Source: Raja brachyura (taxonomy: Eukaryota). Taken from it: DNA of 64,000 nucleotides. The stretch is from assembly GCA_963514005.1 (NCBI GenBank), contig OY740798.1:51894001-51958000 (forward strand), written 5' to 3'. The first letter of the stretch is position 1; every line of letters starts with the position of its first letter. Position numbers and translations under genes: made by a program. The notes below the pieces were generated by a model that was given only the letters and a program-made list of their open reading frames with translations, did no database searches and was not told where the DNA came from. Below, piece by piece: positions 1 to 55,884 of this stretch.

Positions 1-232
1 CCCTTGGCGATTCAGATAAGCTGGCTCAAGAAATCAAAGATTGGAGAACAGAAGATCCTGGACCACATTTGCACAGGATCTCCTGTTAAAAATGCGGATG
101 GAACCTACAATGTGTCGAGCCAAATGAGGCTACGTCCAACACTCCAGGACGATGGTAACACTTACGTGTGCTTAGTGAGACATAGATCACTTTATAAGGA
201 CACAGAGTTGACCACCCATCTGACTGTCAAAG
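1..232 (+). CDS. Exon (5'-truncated by window edge): membrane-proximal extracellular C1-set Ig domain
   Basis: PLAIQISW...DGTYNVSS...YVCLVRH; C-strand Trp, F-strand YxC, NVS sequon; donor AAAG|gtaagt after 232, phase 1. Confidence 0.92.
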
Positions 233-3200
233 GTAAGTTTAATTTTAGTTATAGAAGTAATGTGGAGACAGACCCTTCAGCCCAACTAATCCACACTGAC
301 CATCGATGGGCCAAATATGGGCAGGTTAGTCTGGCGTAGATGGTGCATCTTGGACAGTATGAATAAGTTGGGTTGAAAGGCATTTGTCTCCTACTGATTC
401 TAAAGAAATACTACCTTCCCACCCAAACCACCCACTCCCCTGGTACTTTCCCTTGCAACCGCAGGAAATGCCACACTTGTCATTTTACCTCCCCCGCGAC
501 TCCACCCAAGAGTCTCCACCTAAGCAGTCTTTCCAGGTTCACCTGCACCTCCTCCAACCTCATCTATTGCATCCACTGCTCTAGGTGTCAGCTGCTCTAC
601 ATCTGTGAGACCAAGTGCAGGTTTGGTGATCACTTCGCCCAACACCTCCGCTCGGTTCCTATTAACCAACCTGATCTCCCGGTGGCCCAGCACTTCAACT
701 TCCCCTCCCATTCCGAATCCGACCTTTCTGTCCTGAGCCTCCTCCATGGCCAGTATTTCCTCGTATTTCGCTTGGGCAATTTACTCCCCAGCAGTATGAA
801 CATTGACCTCCAAATTCAGGTAGTCCTTGCTTTCTCTCTCCTTCCCCTCCCCTTCCCAGCTCTCCCACAGCCTACTGTCTCCACATCTTCCTTTCTTCTT
901 CCCGCCGCCCCACCCCCACATCAGTCTGAAGAAGGGTCTCGACCCAAAACGTCACCTATTCCTTCGCTCCATAGATGCTGCCTCACCCACTGTGTTTCTC
1001 CAGCATTTTTGTCTACCTTTGATTTCTCCAGCATCTACAGTTCTTTCTTAAACAACCCTGCACACTAGGGGGCATTCATTTAAGTAAACCAACATCTGCA
1101 GCAAGGAAACGGGCCCTCTTGCCAAACCTCCCTATGCCAATCAAGATGCCCCATCTAAGCTAGTTCCACCTGCCCGTGTTTGGTCCATGTCCCTCTCAAC
1201 CTTTCTTATCCATGTACCTGTCCAAGTGTCTTTTAAATGTAGTTATTGCACCTGCCTCAACTTCCTCTTCTGGCAGCTCGTTCCATGTACGCACCACCTG
1301 TGTGGAAAAAAGTTGTCCCTCGGGTTCCCTTCAAATCTTTCCCTTACTTATGTCCCACGATTGTCTAATCATATGGTATTAACCTGAAATTCAAAGCTCC
1401 TCTACTGGTATACTGGGTCAGGCTACATCTCTTGAAAACATGGATAGGCGACGTTTCAAATCGGGACTCATCAGGTCGTGCATTTTAATGTGAGCAGTTT
1501 GGAGCACAAAATCTAGACGTTTGGAACAAAAACGAATTGTGGCGGGCATTCATTCTCAATAGAGACCAGACACACTAAGTTGTGAAGCAGCGTTACAAAG
1601 CAAATTCATCAAATACATTTGAGAGAGTTGTCTGAAGCAAAATATCCCGAATCCAATAGGGAATACTAGTTTCGCTTAGTCTAGTTCAGTTTAGAGATAC
1701 AGTGTGGAAACCGACCCTTCGGCCAGCTGAGTCCATGTCAACCATGTACATTAGTTCTCTGGTAGACAAAAATACTGGAGAAACTCAGCGGGTGAGGCAG
1801 CATCTATGGAGCGAAGGAAATAGGCAACGTTTCGGGCCGAAACCCTTCTTCAGACTGATGTGGTGGGGGGGGGGGGGGGGGTGCGTGCGGGAAGGGCGGG
1901 AAGAAGAAAGGAAGAGGTGGAGCCAGTGGGCTGAGGGAGAGCTGAGAAGGGGAGGAGACAGCAAGGGCTACCTGAAATGAGAGAGTCAATATTCATACCG
2001 CTGGGGTGCAAACTTTCCAAACAAAATATGAGGTGCTGCTCCTCCAACGTATGGTGGTCCTCACTCTGGCCATGGAGGAGGCCGTTCTCTGTTATCCCAG
2101 TTTTGCATCCTACACACAAGGGGGCATTTACAGAATCCAATTAACTCACAAACCCGCACGACTTTGACGTGTGGGAGGAAACCGAAGCACCCGGAATAAA
2201 CTCACGAGGTCACAGGGACAACCGCACAGTTAGCACCCGGAGTCAGGTTTAGTTCACTTGATTGTCATTTGTACTGAGGTACATTGAAAAGCTTTTCTTT
2301 GTCTCTGGCACTGTGAGGCAACAACTCTACTGCTGTGCTACGGTGCTGCCTATGTAGTTGTTTTGGAAATAGTCTTGTGCAATGAATATACGTATGTTTG
2401 CTAATTGTTATTAAAAACTTTTTTCTTACAGAGCCAGAAATCGTTGTACCAGGGGGAATAATAATATGCTGTGTTATTGGTAGTATACTGCTGTGTTCCT
2501 TGATCATGATCGTTGGATTTTTAATGTATCTAAAGATTTTTAGAAAAGGTAAAGTATCCTTCCCTGAACATTCAAAACCGTTTTGCCTAAGATCGTTTTC
2601 TGTGTTTGATCTGGTATGGTATAGAATGCTTGACATTGCATCAGACACGACATTGAGTATAAGAGGCAGGAAGTCATGTTGCAGCTTTATAGGACTTTAG
2701 TTAGGCCATATTTGGAGTATTGCATGCAGTTATGCTCGCTACTTTACAGGAAGGATGTGGAGGCATGGGGAGAGGTTTACCACAATGCTGCCTGGGTTAG
2801 AAGGTATTAAATATTGGACAAACTTTGATTATTTTCTCTAGAGTGCGGAAAAGGCTAAGGAAAGATCTGATACCAATTGTAAAATTATGCGAAGCATAGA
2901 TAATCAGAACTTTATCCCCAGGGTGTAAATGTCAAAGACCAGAGGGCATAACATAAGATGAGAGGGGCAAAGTTTTATGGAGATATGGACAACAATTTTT
3001 TTTACACAGAAAAAAAGTGTGTTTGGGGTTGCCTGGAACATCCTGCCAGGGGTGGTGGTGGAGGCAGAGCAGATTAGTTTATCTTGGCATCATGTTCGGC
3101 ATGAGCATTGTGGGCCGAAGGGCCTGTTCCTGTGCTGTACTCTGTTCAATGTTCTATATTTCATGTATTTATTCACTACATTACCTCGACTGAATGTGAA

Positions 3201-6200
3201 CTGTCAGATAATTTTAGCTGATCTCCTGGAAAACATTAGTTAGATAGATAGAGTGGACGTGGAGAGAATGTTTCCAGTAGTGGGAGAGTCCAGGACCAGA
3301 GACCAAAGGATGTTCCTTTAGAATGGAGATGAGGAAGAATTTCTTTAACCAGAGGGGGGTGAATCTGTGGAATTAATTGCCACAGGCAGTTGTGGAGGCC
3401 GTATCATTGGGTATTTTTAAAATAAATTGATAGGTTTAATCTGCAATTTGAGAAGAAGAACGTTAAATCGGAAATATCAGTGATGCAGTTGAACAAAGGG
3501 GACTATGAAGGCATGAGAGGGGAGCTGGCCAATGTAGACTGGAAAGGGATCCTAGCAGGAATGACGGTGGAACAGCAATGGCAGGAATTTCTGGGCATAA
3601 GCCGGAAGACGCAGGATCATTTCATTCCAAAAAGGAACAAAGGAACAGTAGGAGGCAACTGTGGCTGACAAGAGAAGTTAGGGATAGAATAAAACTAAGA
3701 GAAAAGATGTATAACACAGCACAGATTAGCGAGAAGTCAGAGAATTGGGAAACTTTCATAGGACAACAGAAGGAAACAAAACGGGCAATACGGGCTGAAA
3801 AGATGAAGTACGAGGGGAAGCTGGCCAGGAATATAAAGAAAGACAGTAAAAGCTTCTTTAGATATGTTAAGGGAAAAAGAGTAGCAATGTCAAATGTGGG
3901 TCCCTTGAAGGCAGACAGGGGTGAAATTATTATGGGCAACAAGGAAATGGCAGAGGTTGAATAGGTACTTCGGATCTGTCTTCACTAAGGAAGACACAAA
4001 CAATCTCGCAAATGTACTGGAGGACAGAGGATCTAAGGAGGTAGAGGAACTGAAAGAAATTTTCATTAGGCGAGAAATAGTATTGGGTAGGCTAATAGGC
4101 TGAAGGAAGATAAATCCCCTGGGCCTGATGGTCTGCATCCCAGGGTCCTCAGTGAGGTGGCTCCAGAAATAGTGGACGCATTGGTGATCATTTTCCAATG
4201 TTCAATAGATTCAGGATCAGTTCCTGTGGATTGGAGGATAGCTTATATTATCCCACTTTTCAAGAAAGAAGCGAGAGAGAAAACGGGGAATTACAGACCA
4301 GTTGGCCTGACTTCGGTGGTGGGAAAGATGCTGGAGTCAATTATTAAAGAGGTAATAATGTGGCATTTGGATAGCAGTAAAAGGATTAGACCAAGTCAAC
4401 ATGGATTTATGAAAAGGAAATCATGCTTGACTAATCTTCTGGAATTTTTTGAGGATGTGACAAGTAAAATGGATGAAGGGGTGCCAGTGAATGTAGTGTA
4501 TCTAGACTTTCAGAAAGCCTTTGATAAGGTCCCGCACGGGAGACTGGTGACTAAAATTAGAGCACATGGTATTGGGGGTAGGGTGTTGAAATGGATAGAA
4601 AATTGGTTGGCAGACCGGAAGCAAAGAGTAGGAGTGAACGGGTCCTTTTCAGAATGGCAGGCAGTGGCGAGTGGAGTGCCGCAAGGCTCGGTGTTGGGGC
4701 CGCTACTGTTTACCATATATATTAATGATTTGGAAGAGGGAATTAGGAGCAACACTAGCAAGTTTGCGGATGACACAAAGCTGGGTGGCAGTGTGAACTG
4801 TGAAGAGGATGTTAGGAGGTTGCAGGGTGACAGGTTGAGTGAGTAGGCAGATGCGTGGCAGATGCAATATAATATAGATAAATGTGAGGTTATCCAGTTG
4901 CGGCAAAAACAAGGGAGCAGATTATTATCACAATGGGGTTAGGTTAGGTAAGGGGGAGGTACAGCGAGACCTGGGTGTCCTCGTACACCAGTCACTGAAA
5001 GTTGGCGTGCAGGTACAGTAGGCAGTGAAGAAAGCTAATGGAATGTTGGCATTCATAACAAGAGGATTTCAGTATAGGAGTAAAGAGGTTCTTCTGCAGT
5101 TGTATAGGGCTCTGGTGAGACCACATCAGGAGTATTGTGTACAGTTTTGGTCTCCTAATTTGAGGAAGGACATCCTTGTGATTGAGGCAGTGCAGAATAG
5201 GTTCACGAGATTGATCCCTGGGATGGTGGGACTATCATATGAGGATAGATTGAAAAGACTAGGCTTGTATTCACTTGAGTCTAGAAGGATGAGGGGCAAT
5301 CTTATAGAAACATATAAAATTATAAAAGGACTGGACAAGCTAGATGCAGGAATAATGTTCCCAATGTTGGGCGAGTCCAGAACCAGCGGCCACAGTCTTA
5401 GAATAAATGGGAGGTCATTTAAGACTGAGGTGAGAAAAAACCTTTTCACCCAGAGAGTTGTGAATTTATGGAATTCCCTGCCACAGCGGGCAGTGGAGGC
5501 CAAATCACTGGATGGTTTTAAGAGAGAGTTAGAGCTCTAGGGGCTAGTGAAGTCAAAGGATATGGGGAGAAGGTAGGCATGGGTTATTGATAGCGGACGA
5601 TCAGCCATGATCACAATGAGTGGCGGCGCTGGCTCGAAGGGCCAAATGGCTTCCTCCTGCACCTATTTTCTATGTTTCTATGTTTTAAAGAATTGATAGG
5701 TTTGTGATTCCTTTCTAAAGGTAGCTACGTCCTTTTATTGTGAGGCTGTTCCCTCTGGTCCTAGACTCTCCCACTTGTGGAAGCATCCGCTCCATATCCA
5801 TTGATTTCTATTAACGTCTAACTTTCATAGGATGACCTTTCTTTGTTCTTGAGTTACACCAGTATTTTTCACCTCTGCATTTCCAGTTCTTTTGTTCTTG
5901 CATCCTGATTTCGATTTATTTTTTCATATCCTTGGCTTTATTTTTGATCTCTGATTCTCATGTTATTTCTAAATGTGGAGATACCTAAAATGTAATGAGA
6001 TATTGAGCCAGGTGTTCTTACATCCATATTTATTACAGTGGATGTTTTATGTAGATGGGTGATGAATTTGTTCTGATACTTTTAAAGTGACATAAACCTC
6101 TTCCAAAAGAAGAATAACATCAACATTTTTTTTCTAGTACCTCCTAAAGTGTCTGAAATCACCAAACCACCACACATGATACATTTGGAAGAAACTGTTC

Positions 6201-9200
6201 TGACTTGTCATATATCAGGATATAAGCCTGCAAACATTTCGCTTTGTTGTTTTCTACAAAGAGAGGGGGAAAATCAAAGTAAGATTTTCCAATGGAGCTC
6301 TGCACCTGGCCACTCGCAAGCACCTGAAGCTATTGAGCAGCAAAGACTTATTTGCAACGGCGACCCTGTGAAGGAGTCTTTCCACATTGAGATGACAACT
6401 GTTACACACGATGGCTGCTCCAGTGCGAAATGCAAAATTATATTCATCCCTGATATTGATAAAGATGACGGAACTGTCCTCTCTCTTCACGTTTCACATA
6501 GCACTCTTGGAGAGCCTATTACTAAATCCATCCAATTGGAAGTTGAAGGAAGTAAGTATACAGTGTGGCACACGGTGCAGCATATAGAGCTGCTGCCTCA
6601 CAGTGGCAGAGGCTTGGAGTTTGACCTCGGGTGCTGTCTGTGTGGAGTTTGCACATTCTCCTTGTGACTGCTGGGTTTTCTCCGGGTGCTCCGGTTTCAT
6701 CCCATATTCCAAAGATGTGCGGGTTTGTAGGTTAATTGGCCTCTGTAAATTGCCCCTAGTGTGTAGGGAGTGGTAGAAAAAGTGGGATAACGTAGAACTA
6801 GTGTGAACAGGTGATTGATAGTTGGTGCGCATTTGTTTGGTTGAAGGGCCTGTTTGCATGCTGTATTTCTAAAGTAGACGAAATCATGTCAAGAAAACAA
6901 TTATCTTTATTTGTTTATAAAAGTGTCTTACCAAATCAATACCTCAGGTAAAATGTAGTTTAGCGTAAAGATACAGCATGGAAACAGGCTCTTCCACTCA
7001 CCAAGTCGGCAGCAACCATCAATCACCTGTTCTACGTTATTCCACTTCCTCACCTATTCCCTACACGCTGAGGGCATTAACCTACAAACCCACGCGCCTT
7101 TAGGATGTGGTGGGAAACCCACGCGGTCATAGGGAAAATGTGCAAACTCCACACAGACAGCACCGGAGGTCAGGATCAAACCTGGTCCGGCTCTATGAGA
7201 CAGCAGCTCTACCAGCTACGCCACTGTGCCACCCAAAATTACTCTGTTTTAACTATATACTTTTAAATTAGCCGTCCTCTCTGTAATTACATCTCACGAA
7301 TAATCCGAAATACTATGCAGTAAATGTTACTAGTGTGTGCGGGGTCTGTTAAAATGGCTGGATTGCAGTTACATCTCAACTGCACAAAATAAAACTCAGC
7401 AAGTTTTATACAATACACTGTAAATTCTAAAACCATTAAATCTTCTCTCCTTTTTCCTTTCTTAAATAAAAACAGTTGCACCAAAGATGACTAATATTCT
7501 AGCTCCGCCTCACATTATTCATGAAGAGGTGATTGCTTTGTCTTGTCCTATTGACGGATTTAAACCAAGACCACTGGCCATCACTTGGTACCAAAAACCC
7601 GACAAAGCAAAAGAAAACATGGGATTGAAAGAAATTGTGAGAACTGTGTATGGAAGCGAAGATGTTATTGTTGGTGGGGAAAAGGATCTGCCTAAATATT
7701 CCCACTCTCTAAATGAGTTGACCAATGAAGACAATACGTATAGTGTCACTAGTTTCCTAAAATTTACACCAACGATTCTCGAAGACCATGAAACGGTGTA
7801 TGTTTGTGAAGTTGAACATCCAGCTACGGCTTCAAAAACACAACATCGGGTCAAACTTGACATAAAAGGTACAGTCAGAATTTCTCTATTCCTATTATGG
7901 ATTGTAAGATACAATGGAAGCAGGCGCTTCCCCTCAGCACGTACTCCTGCAGTCTGGAATGTGCCAGTTGCCAACTTGCCCTGATGGCCATGTGCTGGGA
8001 GAGCACATGGCCATCAAGTTTCGGGCAGACCAAAGAATGTCTTTTACCAAATCTATATGCAGATTAGACCAGGCATCAGGATAATAATCCAGGTGAATGT
8101 GGCTTAATATCAACACGTTTTAATTACCCTTTCAAACTAGGTGGTAGCGTGGACAGTGAAGATGATTATCAAAAATCACATTTGGCTTTTGATCATCTGT
8201 GCAAGTGGGCTGTGCAATAGCTAATGGAGTTTAATGGAGATAAATACAGTTTGCATGTTCTCCTTGTGACTGTATGGGTTTTCTCTGGGTGCTCCAGTCT
8301 CCCACACTTCAAAGACCTACAGATGTGCAGGTTAGTTGGCTTTTGTAAATTGTAAATTGCCCCGTGTGTAGGATCGTGGTAGAGTTTGGGGAGATCGCTC
8401 GTCGGCATGGTGGCTGAAGGGCCTGTTTCCACTCTGGACCTCCAATGTCTGAAGTGCAAGGTGCTGCATATTTGGGAAATCAAACCAAGGCAGAACCTTC
8501 ACAATGAATGGTGGGGCCCTGGGAAATGTTGTAGAACAGGGATCTAGGAGTGCAGGTGGGTTGTTCCCTGAAAGTGGTGTCAAAGGTAGATAGGGTGGTA
8601 AAGAAGGATTTTGGTACATTGGCCTTTATTTGTCATGGTATTGAGGATAGAAGTTGAGATGTTATGTTACAGTTGTACAAGATGTTGGTGAGACAACATT
8701 TAGTGTACCGTGTTCGGTTTTGGTCACCCTGCTATAGGAAGGATGTCATTAAGCTGCTTAGGGTGAAGAGAAGATTTATGTGGATGTTGCTGGGAATTGA
8801 GGGCCTGAGCTATCGGGAGAGTTTGAGCAGGTTAGAAAACTTTTTTGGAGCGCAGGAGGCTGAAGGCTGATCTTATAGAGGCATCTTTTACACAGGAGAG
8901 GGGAATCAACAAACCGGAGGACATAGGTTTAAAGTGAGAGGGGCAAGATTTAGTAGAAATCTGAGAGGAAACGTTTTCGATCAGAAGGTGTTGGGTGTAT
9001 GGAAAGAGTGCCGGAGGAGGTAGTTGAGACAGGTACTATAAAAACATTTCAAAGACTTGAACAGATACATGGATAGGAAAGGTTTAAAGGGATACAAGCC
9101 AAACGTGTATAAATGGGATGAGCTGAGATGGGGCATCTTGGTTGTGGACAAGCTTGGCTGAAGGGCCTATTTCCGTGTTATATGACTCGGAACAAAAATC

Positions 9201-12200
9201 CCTGCAGAATGTCTGAACCTTTCACAGCTTTTTCCTTCCCTTTCTCTTCAGCAATCCCAGAATGTGAAGACATTAAGTTGGCGCCGGAAATCCCAATTGC
9301 AGAAGAATTTGCTGAATCAACCTGCAGGATACATTCCTTCTTCCCAAAGAACATTGAAGTTATTTGGAAAATGGATAACAAACTAATGCAGGAAACTAAA
9401 GCTGAAACTGAACCCACCTTAGGAACTGATGGTCGTTATAGCTTCACAGATCATCTGAAGTTCATCCCTGCGAGAGAAGACCTTGGAAAGATATTAACCT
9501 GCAAATTCCAGCATGAAAGTATCATAGGCACAAAAAGAACTGCCTGTAAATTGGATAAACTGAGTAAGGAAGTGTTTTATTTCTTTTTTATTTTGAAAGA
9601 TTTCATTGTTGAACATTGTTGTCCATTTTTGTTCATTTACCTAGAGTGATAGAGCATGGAAACGGGCCCTTGGGCTCAACTTGCCCACACCAGCCAACAT
9701 ATCCCAGCTACACTAGTGCCCCCTGCTTGCATTTGGTCCATATCCCTCCAAACCTGCCCTAACCATGTACCTGTTTAACTGTTTCTTAAACATTGGGACA
9801 GTCCCAGCCTCAACTACCTCCTCTGGCATCTTGTTCCACACACCCACCACCCTTTGTTGAAAAAGTAACCCCTCAGATTCCTATTAATTCTTTTCCCCTT
9901 CACCTTAAACCTATGTCTTCTGGTCCTCGATTCACTTAATCTGGGCAAGAGACTCTGTGCATCTACCTGATCTATTCCTCTCATGATTTTATACACCTCA
10001 ATAAGATCACACGTCACTGCCCCTGCACTTCAAGGTCCAAGTTATATAAAGGAGGATAGTAAAATAAGAATATAAAGGAGGATAGTAAAAGCTTCTTTAG
10101 GTATGTGAGAGGAAAAAATTAGTTAAGACCAAAGTTGGACCCTTAAAGACTGAAAAGGGTGAATTTATTATGGGGAACAAGGAAATGGCAGATGAGTTGA
10201 ACAGGTACTTTGGATCCGTCTTCACTAAGGAAGACACAAACAATCTTCCGGATATACTAGTGGCCAGAGGATCTGGGATGACGGAGGAACTGAAGGAAAT
10301 CCACATTAGGCAGGAAATGGTGTTGGATACTGATGGGACTGAAGGCTGATAAATCCCCAGGGCCTGATGGTCTGCATCCCAGGGTACTGCAGGAAGTGGC
10401 TCTAGAAATCATGGTTGCATTGGTGATAATTTTCCAATGTTCTATAGATTCAGGATCAGTTCCTGTGGATTGGAGGGTAGCTAATGTTATCCCACTTTTT
10501 AAGAAAGGCGGGAGAGGGAAAACAGGGAATTATAGACCAGTTAGCCTGACATCGGTGGTGGGGAAGATACTGGAGTCAATTATAAAAGATGAAATAGCGG
10601 CACATTTGGATCGCAGTAACAGAATCGGTTCGAGTCAGCATGGATTTACGAAGGGGAAATCATGCTTGACTAATGTTCTGAGGATTTTTTGAGGATGTAA
10701 CTCGGAAAATGGACAAAGGAGAGCCAGTGGATGTAGGGTACCTGGACTTTCAGAAAGCATTTGATAAGGTCCCAGATAGGAGATTAGTAGGTAAAATTAG
10801 GGCACATGGTATTGGGGGTAGAGTGCTGACATGGATAGAAAATTGCTTGGCAGACAGGAAACAAAGAGTAGGGATTAACGGGTCCCTTTCAGAATGGCAG
10901 GGAGTGATTAGTGGGGTGCCGCAACGTTCAGTGCTGGGACCGCAGCTGTTTACAATATACATCAATGATTTAGATGAAGGGATTCAAAGTAACATTAGCA
11001 ATGAGTAGATGACGCAAAGCTGGGTGGCAGTGTGAAGTATGAGTAGGATGCTATGAGAATGCAGGGCGGCTTGGGCAGGTTGGGTGAGAGGGCAAATGCA
11101 TATCAGATGCAGTTTATTGTGGATAAATGTGAGGTTATCCACTTTTATAGCAAAAACAGGAAGGCAGATTACTATCTAAATGGTATCAAGTTGGGAGAAG
11201 GGGAAGTACAACGGGATATGGGGGTCCTTGTTCATCAGTTTATGAAAGTAAGCATGCAGGTACAGCAGGCAGTGAAGAAAGGAAATTGCATGTTGGCCTT
11301 TATAACAAGAGGAATCGACTATAGGAGCAAAGAGGTTCCTTCTGCAGTTGTATAGGGCCCCAGTGCGACCACACCTGGAGTATTGTGTGCAGTTTTGTTC
11401 CCCTAATTTGAGGAAGGACATTCTTGCTATTGAGGGAGCCCAGTGTAGGTCTATAAGGTTAATTCTCGGGATGGCGGTGGACTGTCATATGCTGAGAGAA
11501 TGGAGCAGCTGGGCTTGTACACTCTGGAATTTAGAAGGATGAGAGGGGATCTTATTGAAACATAAGATTATTAAGGGTTTGGACATGCTTAAGGCAGGAA
11601 ACATGTTCCCGATGTTGGGGGAGTCCATACCAGGGGCCACAGTGACGATTAAACACTTTTTCTCACAGAGAGTTGTGAGTGTGTGGAATTCTCTGCCTCA
11701 GAGGGCAGTGGATACTTTGGATAAGTTCTCTGGATACGGGGGATAGGTGCTCGGGATACTTTCAAGAGAGAGCTGGCTAGGGCTCTTATAGATAGCGGAG
11801 TCAGGGGATATGGGGAGAAGGCGGGAACGGGGTACTGATTGGGGATGATCAGTCATGATCACATTAAATGGCGGGTTACACAAAAAGCTGGAGAAACTCA
11901 GCGGGTGCAGCAGCATCTAAGGAGCGAAGGAGATAGGCGACGTTTCGGGTCGAGATCCTTCTTCAGACTTTTCCAAATTTGTAAGCAGTCTGAAGAAGGG
12001 TCTCGACCCGAAACGTCGCCTATCTCCTTCGCTCCTTAGATGCTGCTGCACCCGCTGAGTTTCTCCAGCTTTTTGTGTAACCGTCGATTCTCCAGCATCT
12101 GCAGTTCCTTCTTTAACACATTAAATGGCGGTGCTGGCTCGAAGGGCCGAATGGCCTACTCCTGCACCTATTGTCTATTGTCTGAGTTCCATTCTTAAAT

Positions 12201-15200
12201 TGCAAGAATTAGTGACAGACACAAATTGCTGGAGGAACTCAGTGGGGTGGCCACACCTCTGGAGAAAATTGATAGGTGATGTTTTGGGTCGGGACCCATC
12301 TTCAGACCGTCCCGTAACTCCTCCCCATAACCCCTGACACCCGTACTAATTACCCCCGTCAATCTCCTCCTTAAAAATATCCATTGACTTAGGAATTAAT
12401 TGCCACAGCCTTTTGTGACTGACTAAATAAATGCTTCCTCACTGACCTCACTGACCCACTGACTAAATAAATGCTTCCTCACCTCCTTTGAAAAGATACA
12501 TTGTAGCGTGATGATAATCCCGAAATAAGGCGAGGAGCCAGGTGTTTCGGGAAGTATTTTATTTGCTGTCCTTCTCCTGACCAGATGAGTCTGCAAAAGA
12601 GAGATTGCGCCTAAACCCGTGCCCTTTATCCCTGTAGCTAAAGGCCGCCCCCGGACTCATCCATGCCCGTGCCGAGGGGTTCAATAGTGGAAATGGCCCG
12701 ACCCTTGGGGCCACCACAACGTCATTTTATTCTGAAACTGTGGTCTCTGGTCCGAGACTCTCCCACTAGTAGAAACATCCTCTCTACATTCACTCCATGT
12801 CTATTTTATGGCTCTTTGCTATAAACCAGCATCTGCATTTGCTTTTGTATTACATTCTATCCAAGAGTTAATGTTGTTTTTTTTGCAGTCTCTCCTCCGT
12901 TATTGGACGACATGAAAATTCAACCACAATATCCCAAACCAGGAGATTTGACAACATTCTTGTGCCATGCACGTGGCTTCTATCCAAAGGATGTTATGTT
13001 TATGTGGTTCAAAAATGAGAAGAGGATTGATGATAAAGAGATCACTTCTACTGACCCGGTGATCGATAAAAACACTGGCCTCTTCTGCTGTGAAAGTCGG
13101 TGGAAGTATATGATTTTACCTGATGATCATCAAATCGATTTCAAAGTTGAGGCTCTTCATTTTCAAACTTCTCATCGACCCGCTAAGGTCTTTCACAGCC
13201 TACTCCTTGGAGGTATGAGATATAAAGTCATACAGCCTGGAAACAGGCCCAGTTGCTCAACTTGCCCACACCGACCAACATGTCCCATCTACACTAGTAC
13301 CACCTGCTTACCTTTGGCTCATGTCTCTCTAAATCTGTCCTATCCAAGTACCTACCTAATTGTATACACCCACCACTCTTTGTGTGAGAAAGTTACCCCT
13401 CAGATTCCTATTAAACCTTTCCCCCATTTACCTATGAATCTATGTCCTCTGGTTCTCGATTCCCTTTCTCTGGGCAAGCGACTGTGAGTCTAACTGCTCG
13501 ATTCCTCTCATGATTTTGTCATGCATACATCATCTACTTTGTGGCTTGGACTAGTTCGGTTTGCCTGCTTTTTTCTTCTTCCTGTCTGAAGAAAGGCCCC
13601 AATTGTATATAATATATATATATACAAGGAGACATATATAAGGTCGACAGTCAGAACCTTATTCACCAGGGTGGAAATGCAAAGAATGCAATGAATAGCT
13701 ATGAATCGAGAGGTGGTAACTTTAACGGAGATGTGTGGATCAAGTTTCTTTAGACGGAGTTTGGTGGGTGTCTGAAATTAGCTGCTACGGGTGGTGGTGG
13801 AGGCAGAGACGATAGTGTTGTGTAAATTGCATTTAAATAGGCACATGGATATGCAGGGATTGGAGGGATAAGGTTCAAGTATCGGTAGATGAGATCAGTT
13901 TAGCTCGGCATCATGTTCGGCACAAACGTCGTGGGCCGAAGCTCCCTTTTCCGTGGTGTACTGTTCTATGTAACCTGAAAAATCTTCTGTCCATGTTGTC
14001 CAGAGATGCTGCCTGACCTACTGAGTTGCTCCAGCTCTTTGTGCTTTTACCGCAATAATTTTATCTGATGAGTTATCCTGGGCTTCTACGCAGGGAGGAG
14101 TGTAGATTTACTAGAATGTTGCCTGGGTTCCAGCAACTAAGTTACAGAGAAAGGTTGAACAAGTTAGGTCTTTATTCTTTGGAGCGCAGAAGGTTAAGGG
14201 GGGACTTGATTGAGGTCTTTAAAATGATGAAAGGGATAGACAAAGTTGACGTGGATAAGCTTTTCCCATTGAGGGTAGGGAAGATTCAAACAAGAGGGCA
14301 TGACATGAGAATTAAGGGATAGAAGTTTAGGGGTAACATGAGGGGGAACTTCTTTACTCAGAGAGTGGTGGCTGTGGAATGATCTTCCAGCAGAAGTGGT
14401 GGAGGCAGGATCGATTGTAACATTTAAAAGTAAAGTGGATAGGTATATGGACGGGAAGGGAATTGAGGGGTATGGTCTGAGTGCAGGTAGATGGGACTAG
14501 GGGAAAATAAATGGTCGGCACGGACTGGAAAGGCCGAGAAGGCCTGTTTCCGTGCTGTAATTGTTATATGGTTATATGGTTAATCAGATTATAGAAGGTC
14601 TTGAACACACAACGGACTGCAGATGCAGGTTTACAAAAAAAGACACTAAGTGCTGAAGTAACCCATTATTTCAGGCAGCATCTCTGGAGAGGGTTACACA
14701 AAAAGCTGGAGAAACTCAGCGGGTGCAGCAGCATCTAAGGAGCGAAGGAGTTAGGCGACGTTTCGGGTCGAGACCCTTCTTCATACCTCTGGAGAGCATG
14801 GGTAGGAGACCATTCTTCAGACTGATTGTTGGGGGGGAGAAAGCCAGAAAAAAGGGTGGGGAGGTGACAAAGCCTGGCGAGTGTTAGGTGGATACATGTG
14901 AGGGGAGGGGTTTGATTATCAGATGCAGTGGACAAAGGCTAGGGATGAAAAGGTGACAAAAGGGTGGCAAAAAAAGAGAGACGAGGAGTGAATGTTTTTT
15001 TTCCAATAACTTTATTATTTGAAGGGAAATTTAGTTAGGAAATGTGGCGACTCTTGTGTAGGCCATTCGGCTCATCGTCTAATAATGGCTGATCCCTCTC
15101 TCCATCTTAATCCCATTCTCCTGCCTTCTCCCCTTAACCCCAGGCAACCGTATTAATCAAGAACTAATCAAGTGTAATCTACTATTCTTACACTCTTGTC

Positions 15201-17657
15201 ATTAGGTTTGTTAGTGTTTATATATAGTAAGATTCTATTTGATTGTATGCAAAAGAAGAATTTCACTGTACTTAGCTATGTACTGGAGAGCATGGGATTC
15301 ATAACAAGAGGATTTCAGTACAGGAGTAAAGAGGTTCTTCTGCAGTTGTATAGGGCTCTGTTGAGACGACATCTGGAGTATTGTGTACAGTTTTGGTCTC
15401 CTAATTTGAGGAAGGACATCCTTGTGATTGAGGCAGTGCAGCGTAGGTTCACGAGATTGATCCCTGGGATGGCGGGACTGTCATATGAGGAAAGATTGAA
15501 AAGACTAGGCTTGTATTCACTGGAGTTTAGAAGGATGAGGGGATATCTTATAGAAAAATATAAAATTATAAAAGGACTGGACAAGCTAGATGCAGCAAAA
15601 ATGTTCCCAATGTTGAGCGACTGCAGAACCAGGGGCCACAGTCTTAGAATAAAGGGGAGGTCATTTAAGACTGAGGTGAGAAAAAACTTTTTCACCCAGA
15701 GATTTGTGAATTTATGGAATTCCCTACCACAGAGGGCACTGGAGGCCAGGTCACTGGATGGATTTAAGAGAGAGCTGGATAGAGCTCTAGGGGCTAGTGG
15801 TGTCAAGGGATATGGGGAGAAGGCAGGCACGGGTTATTGATAGGGGACGAATTGCCATGATCACAATGAATGGGTGCTGGCTCGAAGGGCTGAATGGCCT
15901 CCTCCTGCACCTATGTTCTATGTTTCTATGTACTTGTGACAATAAATTACTGGTCCACCATTGTTTTCTCCGGCACCCTTGGTTCCAGAGCCTTGCTGGA
16001 TCATCTGTTTTACTGGACCAACAGAGGTCACGGCCTCTGAGAGGAGTCTAGCGGTACCAGATCGGTCCACTAGGCCGCTGAGTGGCCGAGACACCCGGCT
16101 CGGAAGTTGGCTGTGGGAACAGATCTGCTGGCCACGGGGCAAATTCAACTCGCCGGTCGGCTGCCAGAGGTCCTGATGAGGCTGAGGTCGGTCGTTTCAC
16201 CAAGCCTTGGCTTCACATTTTTGGGGGGACTTCCCAGGGGTGGGTTGGGGGAGAGGGGGGGAGGATAACAAGTTCACTCTCCTAATTGTGTCTCAATTAA
16301 AGGCGTCGTAACACCAGTTGCTCAAAATCAATAAACTAAAATAAACGATAGTTTGAGTGCAATTGTTCTGGGAAAAGGCAGATTTGTTATGTTTTGTTTA
16401 CGGCAACTCCACTATAATAAAATTGAGCAATATCTAAACTGTTGTCTGTTTTATTTTTCCAAATAGGAATTCCAAAGCTTTCTGATATCATTCTTGAGCC
16501 AGAAACTCCATTCTATGGCCAGCCTCTAGTTCTTAAATGCAACGTGACCAATTTTGCTCAGAAAGGAATCTCCACCAATTGGCTAATGGACGATAAACCT
16601 ATTTTGAAAGGAGTCAGGAATACAGACCCCAAGGAGGAACAAGATGGATTTTATCAGTTGTGCTCCTGTCTGGAGCTGATACCCACAGCGTTACATTACA
16701 ACAAGAAACTTGTCTTTGAGGTGAAAAATGAAATTACACCTCAGGCTATTACCAAACACTTATATTTACCACTGCCAGGTAAGTGAAACTGGTAGAAAGC
16801 CTTAATAATTGTTAACAAGGATGGAATTGATCAGTCGGGTACTAAGGTTTTAAAAGAAAATTTTGGGTGGCACAAAGGGGACTTGCAGCACCGGAGACTC
16901 GGATTCGATCTGACCTCGGGTGCTATCTATGCAGAGTTTGCACGTTCTCCCCTTGACCGTGTGGGTTTCCTCCGGGTGCTCTGGTTTCCTCACACATCCC
17001 AAAGACCAGCAGGTTTGTAGGTTAATTGGCTTTGGTAAAATTGTAAATTGTCCCTTGTGTGTAGGTTAGTGCTAGTGAATGGGCTGATCGCTACTCAGTG
17101 GGCCGAAGGCCCTGTTTCCACTATGTATCGCCAAAGTCTAAAGTAAAAGTTAATTGACCTCTGTAAATTGTCCCCTGGTGTATAGGGAGTGGATGAGAAA
17201 ATGGGATAACATAGAACTAGTGTGAACATGTTAGCGATGGTCAGGGTGGATTCTCAGGGCCTAAGAGCGTGTTTCCTTGCTGTATCTCTGAACTAAACTA
17301 TCCACTGTCGAAAGTGAAACCATCTCAATGTGTGCATATTCTACTCTATTTTAAGGTAATTTCCCCACTGTGTCTGAAATCTACTGCAAAGAGGGATGCA
17401 CAGTGGCATCTTTCATGGTTTCGTTGACTGATTATGTACCTCAGGAAATTGAGGTGAAGTGGTTCAAAGGAGAACAACCCTATACAGGATCTGTCCATAA
17501 TGGTCTACCTCAGATTGCCACCACTGGCCTCTTCTCTTCAACAACAGAAATAGAATTTATTCCAGAACCATCTGATCATGACTTGGAAATCAGATGTGAG
17601 ATATTTCATCTGGAGACAAAGAAAAGGATTGAGCAAAAGTGCCGCTTACCATTTTGA
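1..17657 (+). CDS. ncr3lg1: Multi-exon B7-H6 (NCR3LG1)-like IgSF type I membrane protein, 5'-partial: C1 - TM - six C1-like Ig domains - stop. Exons 1-232, 2432-2548, 6138-6551, 7476-7868, 9252-9563, 12889-13212, 16467-16778, 17356-17657
   Basis: Eight exons with canonical splice sites, all phase 1. Internal exon lengths (117, 414, 393, 312, 324, 312 nt) are multiples of 3, so they join into one open frame ending at TGA 17655-17657. Pre-TM domain (DHICTGSPVKNADGTYNVSS..YVCLVRH.SL) resembles, from memory, the B7-H6 C1 domain. The symbol is a family-level assignment, not proven orthology. Confidence 0.8.
410..1050 (+). mobile_element. Penelope-like retroelement 3' fragment (GIY-YIG endonuclease + terminal repeat)
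   Basis: CNRRKCHTC...SSNLIYCIHCSRCQLLYICETK...RF..H..PVAQHF; terminal repeat ctgaagaagggtctcgaccc. Confidence 0.85.
1762..2080 (-). mobile_element. Penelope-like 3' fragment with hammerhead-like motif
   Basis: Same family as 410-1050 (LEEQHLIF..L.SL.PSGMNID); reverse complement reads ctgaagaagggtttcggcccgaaacgtt. Confidence 0.8.
2432..2548 (+). CDS. Exon: transmembrane segment
   Basis: Acceptor ttttcttacag|; encodes EPEIVVPGG-IIICCVIGSILLCSLIMIVGFLMYL-KIFRK; donor G|gtaaag; 117 nt, phase 1-1. Confidence 0.88.
3433..5682 (+). mobile_element. CR1-clade (HER1-like) LINE, 5'-truncated, disrupted ORF2
   Basis: [46 protein letters not shown] motifs; (ttctatgt)n tail. Confidence 0.92.
6138..6551 (+). 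CDS. Exon: post-TM Ig C1-like domain 1 (long C-D insertion)
   Basis: Acceptor tttttctag|; VPPKVSEI...LTCHISGYKP...DDGTVLSLHVSHSTL...LEVEG; donor A|gtaagt; F-strand Cys replaced by Leu, C-strand Trp replaced by Cys. Confidence 0.88.
6563..6875 (+). mobile_element. HE1-type tRNA-derived V-SINE
   Basis: A/B-box-like head, V-domain core ggtgctgtctgtgtggagtttgcac..ctccgggtgctccggtttc, LINE-derived tail gaagggcctgtt. Confidence 0.8.
6955..7233 (-). mobile_element. HE1-type V-SINE
   Basis: Reverse complement of the same head/core/tail. Confidence 0.75.
7476..7868 (+). CDS. Exon: post-TM Ig C1-like domain 2 (long C-D insertion)
   Basis: Pyrimidine tract then aaacag|; IAPKM...LSCPIDGFKPRPLAITW...DNTYSVTS...YVCEVEHPA; donor G|gtacag; both Cys present. 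Confidence 0.9.
8430..9185 (+). mobile_element. Old CR1 LINE 3' fragment
   Basis: Degenerate MLQLYK.LVR.HL.Y..FWSP; tail gaagggcct. Confidence 0.7.
9252..9563 (+). CDS. Exon: post-TM Ig C1-like domain 3
   Basis: Acceptor ttctcttcag|; TCRIHSFFPKNIEVIW...DGRYSFT...LTCKFQHES; donor A|gtaagg; both Cys present. Confidence 0.9.
11875..12116. mobile_element. 242-bp Penelope-derived palindromic element with 15-bp TSD
   Basis: TSD cacattaaatggcgg at 11860-11874 and 12117-12131; 96-bp inverted arms 11874-11969 and 11987-12082 (1 mismatch). Confidence 0.88.
11990..12017 (+). ncRNA. Minimal type I hammerhead ribozyme-like motif
   Basis: CTGAAGA-A-GGGTC-TC-GACCC-GAAA-CG-TC: CUGANGA and GAAA boxes, stem II, short palindromic stem III, UH site; stem I weak. 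Confidence 0.6.
12889..13212 (+). CDS. Exon: post-TM Ig C1-like domain 4
   Basis: Acceptor ttttttgcag|; FLCHARGFYPKDVMFMWFKN...TGLFCCES...FKVEALH; donor G|gtatga; F-strand Cys replaced by Val. Confidence 0.9.
14100..14580 (+). mobile_element. CR1 LINE 3' fragment
   Basis: RFTRMLPG..LSYRERL..LGLYSLERRRLRGDLIE; (gttatatg)n tail; same subfamily as 46700-47216. Confidence 0.85.
14692..14786 (-). mobile_element. 95-bp Penelope-derived unit with 10-bp TSD
   Basis: TSD ctctggagag at 14682-14691 and 14787-14796; sequence equals one arm of the 11875-12116 element. Confidence 0.82.
15292..15930 (+). mobile_element. CR1 LINE 3' fragment
   Basis: Near-copy of 5050-5682; (ttctatgt)n tail. Confidence 0.88.
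16467..16778 (+). CDS. Exon: post-TM Ig C1-like domain 5
   Basis: Acceptor tttttccaaatag|; LKCNVTNFAQKGISTNW...DGFYQLCSCL...LVFEVKN; donor G|gtaagt; F-strand Cys replaced by Phe. Confidence 0.88.
16866..17300 (+). mobile_element. HE1-type V-SINE (compound)
   Basis: B-box ggattcgatc, V core, two tails. Confidence 0.72.
17356..17657 (+). CDS. Exon: post-TM Ig C1-like domain 6, carries the stop codon
   Basis: Acceptor ctattttaag|; FMVSLTDYVPQEIEVKWFK...TGLFSSTT...IRCEIFH...LPF*; B-strand Cys replaced by Val; TGA is followed by G|gtaaat, a phase-1-position donor. Confidence 0.86.
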
Positions 17658-18503
17658 GGTAAATATGACTTAGTGCTTCCAAAGCATTGTTTCGACAAGG
17701 CTAGGTTTTAATATAGCTAGTTTCTTCCCAGCTGTTATCACGCAATTGAACCATCATCTCACCAACTAGATTGCGGCCCTGACCTCCCACCCAACTTTAT
17801 CTTGCACTAAATGTTGTACCCTGTAAATGTATACGTCGTGGGAGCAGAATTAGACCATTCGGCCCATTGAGTCTACTCCGTCATTCAATCATGGCTGTTG
17901 CATCTTTCACTCTCAACCCCATTCTCCTGCCTTTATCTGTTCACTTTGGGCAGTTTGATTTTACCATGTATAGTCTTTCCGCTGACTAGTCTTCTGCTGA
18001 CTGGATAGCATGCAACAAAAAACTTTTCACTGTACCTTGGTACATGTGGCAATAAACTAAACTAATCCATTGGATCATATTGCCCATTCCTGGCAAAATG
18101 TCATGTAATACAATGTGCTGGAGTGACTCAACGGGTCAGGCAGCATCTATGGAGAACGTGACGTTTTTGGTTGGACCCCTCCTTCAGACTGCTTGTGCTG
18201 GGGAATCTCATAAACTCCACTATTGTGTCGGAAGGAACTGAGGCTTATCGATTGTCGGTACCTGTACCTGGTTTACAGGTACCTGTAATACCTGTAAAGT
18301 CCACTATCGTATCTGCCTCCACCACCACCACTGGCAGCTTTCAAGACTCCACCATCCTCTGTATAAAAAAAATCTCACCCCGTACATCTCCTTTAAACTG
18401 GCTACTCGTGCTTTCAAGCTACGGCCTGTTATATTTGATATTTCCACCCTGGGAAAAAAGTTCTGACTACCCTAAATATCCTTCTCATAATTTTATATAC
18501 TTA

Positions 18504-34333: not shown

Positions 34334-34654
34334 CTTTGACAGTCAGATGGGTGGTCAACTCTGTGTCCTTATCAAGTGATCTATGTCTCACTAAGCAGAC
34401 GAAAGTGTTACCATCGTCCTGGAGTGTTGGACGTAGCCTCATATGGCTCGACACATTGTAGGTTCCATCCGCATTTTTAACAGGAGATCCTGTGCAAATG
34501 TGGTCTGGGATCTTCTGTTCTCCAATCTTTGATTTCTTGAGCCAGCTTATCTGGATCGCCAAGGGGTAAAACACTGTACTGTCACATTTCACCGATTTTT
34601 CCGTCCCATTCTCAATGGTGATAGCAGTTGTGGATAAACTCATTTGCGGTTCAG
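34334..34654 (-). CDS. Inverted paralogous C1-set Ig exon (copy of the exon at 1-232); may be an orphan/pseudo-exon
   Basis: Acceptor atctttacag|, open frame EPQMSLSTT...VKCDSTVFYPLAIQISW...FVCLVRH...LTVK, donor G|gtaagt; 7 differences in 232 nt versus the + copy; no companion exons found in the window. Confidence 0.82.
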
Positions 34655-34821
34655 CTGTAAAGATAATAATTAATGTTAGTCATACAGTGTGGAAACAGGC
34701 CCTTCGGCCCAATCTGCCACACGAGCCAGCATGTCCCATAGTCACATTGTCATTTAATATTAGTGAACATTTTAATTTTTTTTAAAAATCCGAATCAAGT
34801 AAGTGCACACATTGAAAAGTT

Positions 34822-55743: not shown

Positions 55744-55884
55744 NNNNNNNNNNNNNNNNNNNNNNNNNNNNNNNNNNNNNNNNNNNNNNNNNNNNNNNNN
55801 NNNNNNNNNNNNNNNNNNNNNNNNNNNNNNNNNNNNNNNNNNNNNNNNNNNNNNNNNNNNNNNNNNNNNNNNNNNNNNNNNNNN
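55744..55884. other. Assembly gap (141 N), followed by (TATCA)n microsatellite to ~55975
   Basis: Run of N. Confidence 0.99.

What the first reader, a model, noticed from the sequence alone, without database searches (positions are those of the whole stretch)
1..17657. B7-H6-like receptor whose predicted cytoplasmic tail is a chain of six Ig C1-like domains
Seen: an intact phase-1 exon chain, C1 -> TM -> 6 Ig domains (~685 aa) -> stop. No second TM, signal peptide or leader exon was found after the TM. The TM has acidic residues before it (EPE) and basic residues after it (KIFRK). Established: the positive-inside rule gives N-out/C-in topology; C1-set domains are normally extracellular or luminal (Ig, TCR, MHC, tapasin, B7); B7-family tails are short or non-Ig (e.g. 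B30.2 in butyrophilins). Inference: an immune ligand/receptor with an intracellular C1-like Ig array, possibly acting as a scaffold, decoy or pathogen-sensing module. I cannot confirm from the sequence whether this architecture has already been reported in non-mammalian B7-H6-like genes.
Basis: partly seen in the sequence, partly recalled or inferred. Interest (0 to 1): 0.92.

Follow-up and report, generated by a model that had tools for sequence, protein, structure and literature searches.

The report
B7-H6-like gene with Ig-domain tail
This skate-like locus encodes a relative of the NK-cell ligand B7-H6 whose membrane anchor is followed, in the same messenger RNA, by six more antibody-type (C1) domains that should lie inside the cell, a layout kept from chimaeras to frogs that I found in no paper.

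Summary
The window holds a partial C1 exon, a transmembrane (TM) exon and six Ig exons. All are phase 1 with canonical AG/GT sites, and the chain ends at a TGA at 17655-17657. One correction: Ig3 ends at 9563, not 9545.

- **One gene, not two.** In close relatives, intronless RNA-derived contigs (99% identical to Leucoraja erinacea XP_055505932; 83-91% to the window's exons) and an elephant-shark protein record read straight from the TM into the first tail domain.
- **Identity.** The ectodomain of the orthologues is B7-H6 (PDB E 7.5e-31; Foldseek TM-score 0.90).
- **Topology.** A single TM is present, and the side after it is the more positive in 26 of 27 family members. The tail is therefore predicted to be cytosolic.
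- **Consistent with a cytosolic tail.** Four of six tail domains lack the canonical disulfide, against none in the ectodomain. Stray cysteines are about 3 times denser in the tail. N-glycosylation sites occur there only at chance level.
- **Caveats.** Ig2 and Ig3 keep invariant cysteine pairs. TM-skipping isoform models exist in two sharks, and these would secrete the whole chain. No topology experiment exists, and I obtained no RNA reads for this genome.

This scan had already reached the same reading on a paralogue 311 kb upstream (s1-880671). I found no paper describing the layout.

The parts
1..232 (+). 3' part of the membrane-proximal ectodomain C1 exon (cut by the window start); donor AAAG|gtaagt
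   Evidence: Pfam C1-set 1.2e-07, above cut-off. 91% identical to residues 158-234 of P0172 and 75% to P0001. Splice site.
2432..2548 (+). Transmembrane exon (EPE - about 30 hydrophobic residues - KIFRK), phase 1-1
   Evidence: Kyte-Doolittle maximum 3.09. Canonical acceptor and donor. 70-74% identical to the TM exon of skate orthologues. The side after the TM is the more positive in 26 of 27 family members.
6138..6551 (+). Tail Ig1 exon (137 aa with a long loop insertion; B-strand Cys kept, F-strand Cys replaced by Leu)
   Evidence: Pfam is weak (C1-set 0.11, V-set 0.035). 83% identical to P0172 268-411. The equivalent domain in the AlphaFold2 model of P0172 is a confident beta-sandwich apart from loop 332-351. 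Cysteine table.
7476..7868 (+). Tail Ig2 exon (C1-set, canonical Cys pair and Trp kept; conserved KYxH loop motif)
   Evidence: Pfam C1-set 8.9e-10. HMMER search: 107 cluster representatives at E<1e-10. Cys pair present in 27/27 and 26/27.
9252..9563 (+). Tail Ig3 exon (C1-set, canonical Cys pair kept); the donor is at 9563, not 9545
   Evidence: Pfam C1-set 4.5e-12. Donor CTGA|gtaagg and junction codon ATC = Ile, as in Rhinoraja. 90% identical to P0172.
12889..13212 (+). Tail Ig4 exon (C1-set; the F-strand Cys position is never Cys in 27 of 27 family members)
   Evidence: Pfam C1-set 6e-07. Cysteine table. 86% identical to P0172.
16467..16778 (+). Tail Ig5 exon (C1-set; the F-strand Cys position is Phe)
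   Evidence: Pfam C1-set 4e-11..
17356..17657 (+). Tail Ig6 exon with the stop codon (TGA 17655-17657); B-strand Cys position is Val, F-strand Cys kept
   Evidence: Pfam C1-set 1.5e-05. The C-terminus ...KRIEQKCRLPF* matches ...KRIEQRCHLTF (Pristis) and ...KRIEQKCRLTF (Rhinoraja).
18051..18056 (+). Candidate polyadenylation signal AATAAA, about 395 nt after the stop
   Evidence: Pattern scan. Fits the roughly 0.3-0.7 kb of untranslated sequence in the skate transcript contigs. Not otherwise tested.

Best explanation
This is one gene: a skate paralogue or orthologue of an ancestral-type B7-H6 (NCR3LG1) family. Its main mRNA encodes signal peptide - IgV - IgC1 - one transmembrane helix - six C1-like Ig domains - stop. 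Shown here: the exon chain is intact, and in close relatives the same chain is present in spliced transcripts. Predicted: after the signal peptide is cleaved, the TM acts as a stop-transfer anchor. The V-C1 head is then displayed on the cell surface, by homology as a ligand for NKp30-type receptors. The 685-residue Ig array stays in the cytosol, where it folds as disulfide-independent beta-sandwiches. Inferred, not shown: the array works as a rigid cytosolic docking or sensing platform. It would couple the state of the cell interior to the display, clustering or turnover of the surface ligand, much as the B30.2 tail does in the related butyrophilins. A minor TM-skipping isoform may release the whole chain as a soluble form.
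For: - **Exons and splice sites:**
- **One transcript in relatives:** five Logan-assembled ORFs of 944-958 aa lie on contigs of only 3.1-3.6 kb, so they are intronless. They are 99% identical to Leucoraja erinacea XP_055505932 and 83-91% identical to the window's exons. All read ...LTVREPE-TM-KILKK-VPPKVSEI....
- **Elephant shark:** UniProt V9K7L7 has the same layout and differs at several residues from the genome-based model.
- **Spread of the layout:** it recurs in gene models from chimaera, sharks, rays, coelacanth, lungfish, reedfish, frogs, salamanders and a caecilian.
- **Ectodomain is B7-H6:** PDB 6yjp E 7.5e-31, against 5e-18 for B7-H3. Foldseek gives TM-score 0.90 and rmsd 2.1-2.4 A to B7-H6 crystal structures.
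- **Topology:** nearly all full-length members have one internal hydrophobic helix and none after it. Net charge is about -0.7 before and +2.5 after the TM, and the C-side is the more positive in 26 of 27.
- **Tail is under constraint:** mean pairwise identity among 11 chondrichthyan orthologues is 52-62% for the tail domains, against 63-67% for V and C1. AlphaFold2 folds all eight domains with mean pLDDT 86.8.
- **Signs of a reducing compartment:** the canonical Cys pair is invariant in V and C1 but missing one partner in Ig1, Ig4, Ig5 and Ig6 in most species. Non-canonical cysteines run at 1.76 per 100 aa in the tail against 0.53 in the ectodomain, and 33-62% of tail domains hold an odd number of Cys.
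- **Glycosylation sites:** N-x-S/T sites are at chance level in the tail (observed/expected 1.02, none conserved). The ectodomain has 1.30 and one conserved site.
Against: - Splicing of this particular copy is therefore inferred from relatives.
- Ig2 and Ig3 keep both canonical cysteines in essentially all 27 aligned members. That is what one expects if they form disulfides in an oxidising compartment.
- NCBI isoform X2 models of Carcharodon and Cetorhinus skip the TM exon in frame (...LTVK-VPPKVSDI...). Those would put the whole chain in the secretory pathway.
- To my knowledge, C1-set domains have otherwise only been reported outside the cytosol.
- The amino-acid composition of tail versus ectodomain differs only mildly.
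- The V and leader exons of this copy lie outside the window, so I cannot show the gene is complete.
- The proposed cytosolic function is analogy only.
Confidence: 0.62

Rival explanations
1. The TM exon is a cassette exon, and the Ig array does its work outside the cell. The biologically relevant product is then a secreted V-C1-(Ig)6 chain, for example a soluble NKp30-type ligand or decoy. The TM-containing mRNA would give a membrane ligand whose cytosolic tail is a by-product.
For: All exons are phase 1, so skipping 2432-2548 keeps the frame. NCBI isoform X2 models in Carcharodon carcharias and Cetorhinus maximus have a signal peptide, no TM, and C1 joined directly to Ig1. Ig2 and Ig3 keep invariant canonical Cys pairs over more than 400 million years. 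C1-set domains are otherwise extracellular or luminal (own knowledge).
Against: Every transcript-derived sequence I could see keeps the TM exon: five skate contigs and the elephant-shark record. So do almost all gene models. The TM exon is itself conserved at 61% among chondrichthyan orthologues. Four of six tail domains have lost the canonical disulfide, stray and odd-numbered cysteines are about 3 times denser than in the ectodomain, and no glycosylation site is conserved in the tail. These are unusual for secreted Ig domains.
Confidence: 0.22
2. This copy in the window is a decaying or non-functional paralogue of the family. Its exons merely still look intact.
For: The genome holds several copies: notes s1-880671, s1-881295 and s1-880792, and an orphan inverted C1 exon at 34335-34658. 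The V and leader exons are outside the window. Ig6 is about 3-5 residues shorter near its start than in the Leucoraja and Rhinoraja orthologues. No expression data could be obtained for this genome.
Against: Eight of eight exons are open with canonical splice sites, and no junction codon is a stop. The stop position and C-terminal motif are conserved. Exon identity to the Leucoraja protein is 75-91% with no frameshift.
Confidence: 0.08
3. There are two separate genes: a short B7-H6-like gene ending soon after the TM exon, and an independent six-Ig gene. The long proteins would be gene-prediction artefacts.
For: Phase 1-1 Ig and TM exons always join in frame, so an open chain alone proves nothing. 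The 3.6 kb intron after the TM exon holds a retroelement and could hide small exons.
Against: Intronless transcript contigs of skates carry the full 958-aa ORF across the TM-Ig1 junction. So does the elephant-shark record. No leader or signal-peptide exon precedes Ig1, and the six-Ig chain has no start of its own. The junction motif K(Y/I)(F/L)(R/K)K-VPPKVS is conserved across the family.
Confidence: 0.03

Closest known systems
Human B7-H6 / NCR3LG1 (ligand of the NK receptor NKp30)
   Same: Signal peptide, IgV + IgC1 ectodomain and a single TM. The orthologues' ectodomain is the best PDB match by sequence (E 7.5e-31) and by fold (TM-score 0.90, 28-30% identity). Some frog members are already named NCR3LG1(-like) by NCBI.
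   Different: By my own knowledge, human B7-H6 has a cytoplasmic tail of about 170 residues, described as Gag-like with signalling motifs and containing no Ig domain. Here the tail is six C1-like Ig domains (685 aa). Binding to NKp30 is untested.
Butyrophilins (BTN/BTNL; B7-related V-C ectodomain with a cytosolic B30.2 domain)
   Same: A B7-type V-C head, one TM and a large folded domain in the cytosol. In BTN3A1 that domain senses an intracellular ligand and signals inside-out (own knowledge). This is the closest functional analogy for a folded cytosolic module on a B7-type ligand.
   Different: No B30.2/SPRY domain is present; Pfam finds only Ig families. The cytosolic module is an Ig array, and no ligand is known.
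UrIg / UrIg2 of elasmobranchs (non-rearranging VJ + multiple C1 domains; PMC12227049)
   Same: Cartilaginous-fish genes with a V domain followed by many C1-set domains encoded by phase-1 exons. The number of domains varies between species.
   Different: In UrIg2 all C1 domains come before the TM and are extracellular. Here the TM sits after the first C1, and six C1-like domains follow it. The V domain here is B7-H6-like, not VJ-type. UrIg2 is only a weak PDB hit (8.6e-09).
Cytosolic Ig-domain proteins of muscle (titin, obscurin, MyBP-C; I-set)
   Same: Chains of Ig-fold domains that fold without disulfides in the cytosol. Titin I65-I70 is the top Foldseek hit for the whole multi-domain model, which is a generic bead-chain match.
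   Different: Those are I-set domains in soluble proteins with no signal peptide and no TM. Here the domains score as C1-set and hang from a type I membrane protein.

Membership tests
B7-H6 / NCR3LG1 | IgV + IgC1 ectodomain more similar to B7-H6 than to any other IgSF protein | tested here: met
   Tested on orthologue P0001: PDB 6yjp, 4zso and 3pv6 at E 7.5e-31 to 2e-30, with the next hit (B7-H3) at 5e-18. The P0172 model superposes on B7-H6 at TM-score 0.90. The window holds only the last 77 aa of C1, which are 91% identical to P0172. The V exon is outside the window.
B7-H6 / NCR3LG1 | Type I single-pass membrane protein | tested here: met
   One hydrophobic helix. Signal-peptide-like N-terminus in full-length orthologues. 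Positive-inside charge in 26 of 27. This is a prediction only.
B7-H6 / NCR3LG1 | Binds NKp30 (NCR3) | not testable with these tools
   Needs a binding assay. No NKp30 gene was looked for in this genome.
B7-H6 / NCR3LG1 | Cytoplasmic tail of the mammalian type (about 170 aa, Gag-like, no Ig domain) | tested here: not met
   The tail is six C1-like Ig exons. This separates the ancestral-type members from the mammalian protein. It is not a reason to exclude them from the family, because the ectodomain match is specific.
Immunoglobulin C1-set domain (Pfam PF07654) | Score above Pfam's gathering cut-off (21 bits) | tested here: met
   C1 exon 32.4, Ig2 39.2, Ig3 46.6, Ig4 30.2, Ig5 43.5 and Ig6 25.7 bits. 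Ig1 scores only 13.3 bits and fails. The orthologue's Ig1 still folds as a beta-sandwich.
Immunoglobulin C1-set domain (Pfam PF07654) | Canonical B-F disulfide cysteines and C-strand tryptophan | tested here: not met
   Trp is kept in Ig2-Ig6. The Cys pair is complete only in Ig2 and Ig3. Ig1, Ig4 and Ig5 lack the F-strand Cys and Ig6 lacks the B-strand Cys, in the window and in most of the 27 relatives.
Butyrophilin-type B7 relatives | Cytosolic B30.2 (PRY-SPRY) domain | tested here: not met
   No SPRY or PRY hit in the exon-by-exon Pfam scan or in the precomputed Pfam lists of the orthologues.
UrIg / UrIg2 | VJ-type V domain, all C1 domains extracellular, TM at the C-terminal end | tested here: not met
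   Here the TM lies between the first and second C-type domains, and nothing hydrophobic follows. UrIg2 architecture is taken from PMC12227049.

The most novel reading that the evidence does not exclude
The ancestral form of the NK-cell ligand B7-H6 carries a cytosolic array of C1-type Ig domains. This array would act as an intracellular recognition module, for example a docking surface for cytosolic B30.2/TRIM-type or viral proteins. It would give inside-out control of an innate immune ligand, and mammals later replaced it with a Gag-like tail. This would be the first C1-set Ig domains shown to work in the cytosol.
Probability: 0.3. Interest if true: 0.9.

Novelty: new variant of a known kind. 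Interest (0 to 1): 0.72.

Why it matters
C1-set Ig domains define the extracellular recognition molecules of adaptive immunity: antibodies, T-cell receptors, MHC, tapasin and some B7 proteins. A conserved array of them on the cytosolic side of a B7-H6-type ligand would break that rule.

The array is kept under purifying selection in cartilaginous fish, lobe-finned fish, reedfish and amphibians. It would imply an unrecognised intracellular function for this NK-cell ligand family.

It would also recast the mammalian Gag-like tail as a late replacement.

The question is directly testable with tagged constructs of sequences that are already public.

Tried and rejected
- **Read laying:** There are therefore no reads for this genome.
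- **The look-up of encoding contigs:** I could not fetch the transcript contigs or orthologous DNA, so there is no dN/dS and no direct look at the cDNA junctions. The intronless nature of the contigs is inferred from ORF length against contig length.
- **The search for homologous proteins with the Ig1 exon alone:** nothing found. The length filter excludes the full-length relatives.
- **Amino-acid composition of tail versus ectodomain:** only mild differences, so inconclusive.
- **Covariation of variable cysteines:** dominated by truncated sequences, so uninformative.
- **Rfam scan of 6700-64000:** no RNA family.
- **Literature:** no description of Ig domains in a B7-H6 tail. The two most relevant papers, Flajnik et al. 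2012 (PMC3709836) and Ohta & Flajnik 2015 (PMC4594805), are not held, so prior mention there cannot be excluded.
- **IgW/IgNAR-type heavy-chain constant region:** considered and rejected. There is no rearranging V, the TM lies in the middle, and the ectodomain is B7-H6.
- **The donor straight after the stop codon as a sign of a read-through exon:** rejected, because the stop position is shared by the orthologues.
Full report
**What is in the sequence.** The window looks like a cartilaginous-fish genome rich in LINE and retroelement debris. On the + strand between 1 and 17657 there are eight open exons.
- C1 exon, cut by the window start: ..232.
- A 117-nt transmembrane (TM) exon: 2432-2548.
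- Six Ig exons: 6138-6551, 7476-7868, 9252-9563, 12889-13212, 16467-16778 and 17356-17657.

Each has a polypyrimidine tract plus AG, and a GT donor. Each is phase 1-1, and the split codons read E, V, I, A, I, G and G. Comparison with orthologues moved the Ig3 donor from my first choice, 9545, to 9563. The chain ends at TGA 17655-17657. A strong donor follows the stop at once, but the stop lies at the same place in the orthologues, and an AATAAA lies about 395 nt downstream.

Pfam places the C1 exon and Ig2-Ig6 in the C1-set above the curated cut-off. Ig1 is weak. Only the TM exon is hydrophobic. The six tail domains share just 20-31% identity with one another, so they are old, individually conserved domains and not recent copies.

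**Constraints on how I worked.** The window was searched exon by exon by reference, and natural full-length orthologues served as proxies.

**Is it one gene?** A HMMER search with the Ig2 exon found 107 cluster representatives at E<1e-10. In most of them Ig2 sits at about residue 430-560 of a protein of roughly 1000 aa. The best hit, Pristis pectinata XP_051885227 (977 aa), has signal peptide - V - C1 - TM - six Ig domains and ends ...KRIEQRCHLTF, like the window. All eight window exons map onto it in order at 54-75% identity.

The closest relatives form one 90%-identity cluster. It contains:
- Leucoraja erinacea XP_055505932;
- Amblyraja radiata XP_032894418;
- five ORFs from Logan assemblies, 944-958 aa long, on contigs of only 3.1-3.6 kb.

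An ORF of 2.9 kb on a 3.5 kb contig cannot contain the more than 15 kb of introns seen here, so these are spliced transcripts. They differ from each other at 0.3-1.2% of residues. All read ...THLTVREPE-[TM]-KILKK-VPPKVSEIAKPPHIIHLEE.... The window's exons are 83-91% identical to them, apart from the TM exon at 70% and Ig6 at 75%.

The elephant-shark entry V9K7L7 has the same layout and differs at several residues from the genome-based model. To my knowledge it comes from the species' cDNA project. The two-gene reading is therefore refuted for the relatives and very unlikely here.

**What family is it?** The ectodomain of the orthologue matches human B7-H6 (NCR3LG1) far better than anything else in the PDB. 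The E-values are 7.5e-31 for B7-H6, 5e-18 for B7-H3 and 9e-14 for TAPBPR. The AlphaFold2 model of the skate protein superposes on B7-H6 crystal structures at TM-score 0.90 and rmsd 2.1-2.4 A.

Family members carrying the Ig tail occur in chimaera, many sharks and rays, coelacanth, lungfish, reedfish, frogs, salamanders and a caecilian. Nearly all are labelled 'uncharacterized'; three frog entries are named NCR3LG1 or NCR3LG1-like. The number of tail domains varies: four in several galeomorph shark models, six in batoids and orectolobiform sharks, and more in lobe-finned fish and frogs.

**Is the tail cytosolic?**

Evidence for:
- Full-length members have an N-terminal signal-like segment, one internal TM and no later hydrophobic segment.
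- The 12 residues before the TM carry a net charge of about -0.7, and the 12 after it about +2.5. The C-side is the more positive in 26 of 27.
- In 27 aligned members the canonical cysteines and tryptophan of V and C1 are invariant. In the tail, the F-strand position of Ig4 is never Cys, that of Ig1 and Ig5 rarely is, and the B-strand position of Ig6 usually is not.
- Non-canonical cysteines run at 1.76 per 100 residues in the tail against 0.53 in the ectodomain. A third to two thirds of tail domains hold an odd number of cysteines.
- N-x-S/T sites are at chance level in the tail (observed/expected 1.02, none conserved). The ectodomain has 1.30 and one conserved site.
- The tail is not decaying. 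Its domains are 52-62% identical among 11 chondrichthyan orthologues, against 63-67% for V and C1. All fold confidently in the model, which has mean pLDDT 86.8 and a helix at the TM.

Evidence against:
- Ig2 and Ig3 keep both canonical cysteines in essentially every member.
- NCBI isoform X2 models of Carcharodon and Cetorhinus skip the TM exon in frame, giving a fully secreted chain.
- Amino-acid composition is uninformative.
- Nothing here measures topology.

**Most likely mechanism.** The gene encodes a type I surface ligand of the B7-H6 kind. Its head faces NKp30-type receptors, and its six-domain Ig array lies in the cytosol.

By analogy with the B30.2 tail of butyrophilins, I infer that the array is a docking or sensing platform. 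It would link intracellular events to the display or clustering of the ligand. This last step is inference only.

The main rival is that the Ig array matters chiefly in a secreted, TM-less isoform.

**Novelty.** Ten searches or look-ups in the paper library found no description of Ig domains in a B7-H6 tail, nor of cytosolic C1-set domains. The key 2012 and 2015 papers from the Flajnik laboratory are not held.

UrIg2, the nearest multi-C1 elasmobranch gene in the literature, has its TM after all the C domains.

The same scan already followed up a paralogue 311 kb upstream and reached the same reading (s1-880671). Further copies are noted 14 kb upstream and 26.5 Mb away. I could not test that report's claim that the layout reaches alligators.

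I file this as a new variant of a known kind: a B7-H6 family member with an unprecedented tail that is present but unremarked in public gene models.

Noticed in passing
window 34335-34658 (- strand): A complete C1 exon in inverted orientation, about 95% identical in protein and 95.8% in DNA to the window's own C1 exon at 1-232. Its flanking intron is only 86% identical and is displaced by about 4.3 kb (241-376 matches 29991-29856). No V, TM or tail exons of the family were found around it on that strand, so it looks like an orphan duplicated exon or a gene-conversion tract.
   Followed up: partly
window 3426-5537, 10100-11540, 15178-15837 (+) and many places in 19-64 kb: The introns after the TM exon, Ig3 and Ig4 hold fragments of the same reverse-transcriptase-bearing LINE-like element. 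The downstream half of the window is mostly retroelements, including a 1419-codon open frame at 57030-61286 that was not characterised.
   Followed up: no
window 17655-17665: The stop codon of the last exon is followed at once by a strong phase-1 splice donor (TGA G|GTAAAT). It looks as if the exon was once internal, or is still spliced to a 3'-UTR exon. Longer family members in chimaera, coelacanth, lungfish and frogs do carry further Ig domains after this point.
   Followed up: partly
Ig2 exon, window 7476-7868; alignment A1: Ig2 carries a long loop insertion with a motif, KYxH...E....D.TYS, that stays recognisable from chimaera to frogs. It is one of the best-conserved stretches of the tail and a candidate functional site.
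   Followed up: no
P0009 (Amblyraja radiata XP_032894416, neighbouring locus LOC116984368): A paralogue whose gene model has the V-C1 unit duplicated in tandem before the TM, and an acidic repeat (DVNEDADED...) inside the tail. This shows the family is structurally plastic on both sides of the membrane.
   Followed up: no
window 55744-55884: An assembly gap or masked stretch of 141 N. It was left as it is.
   Followed up: no
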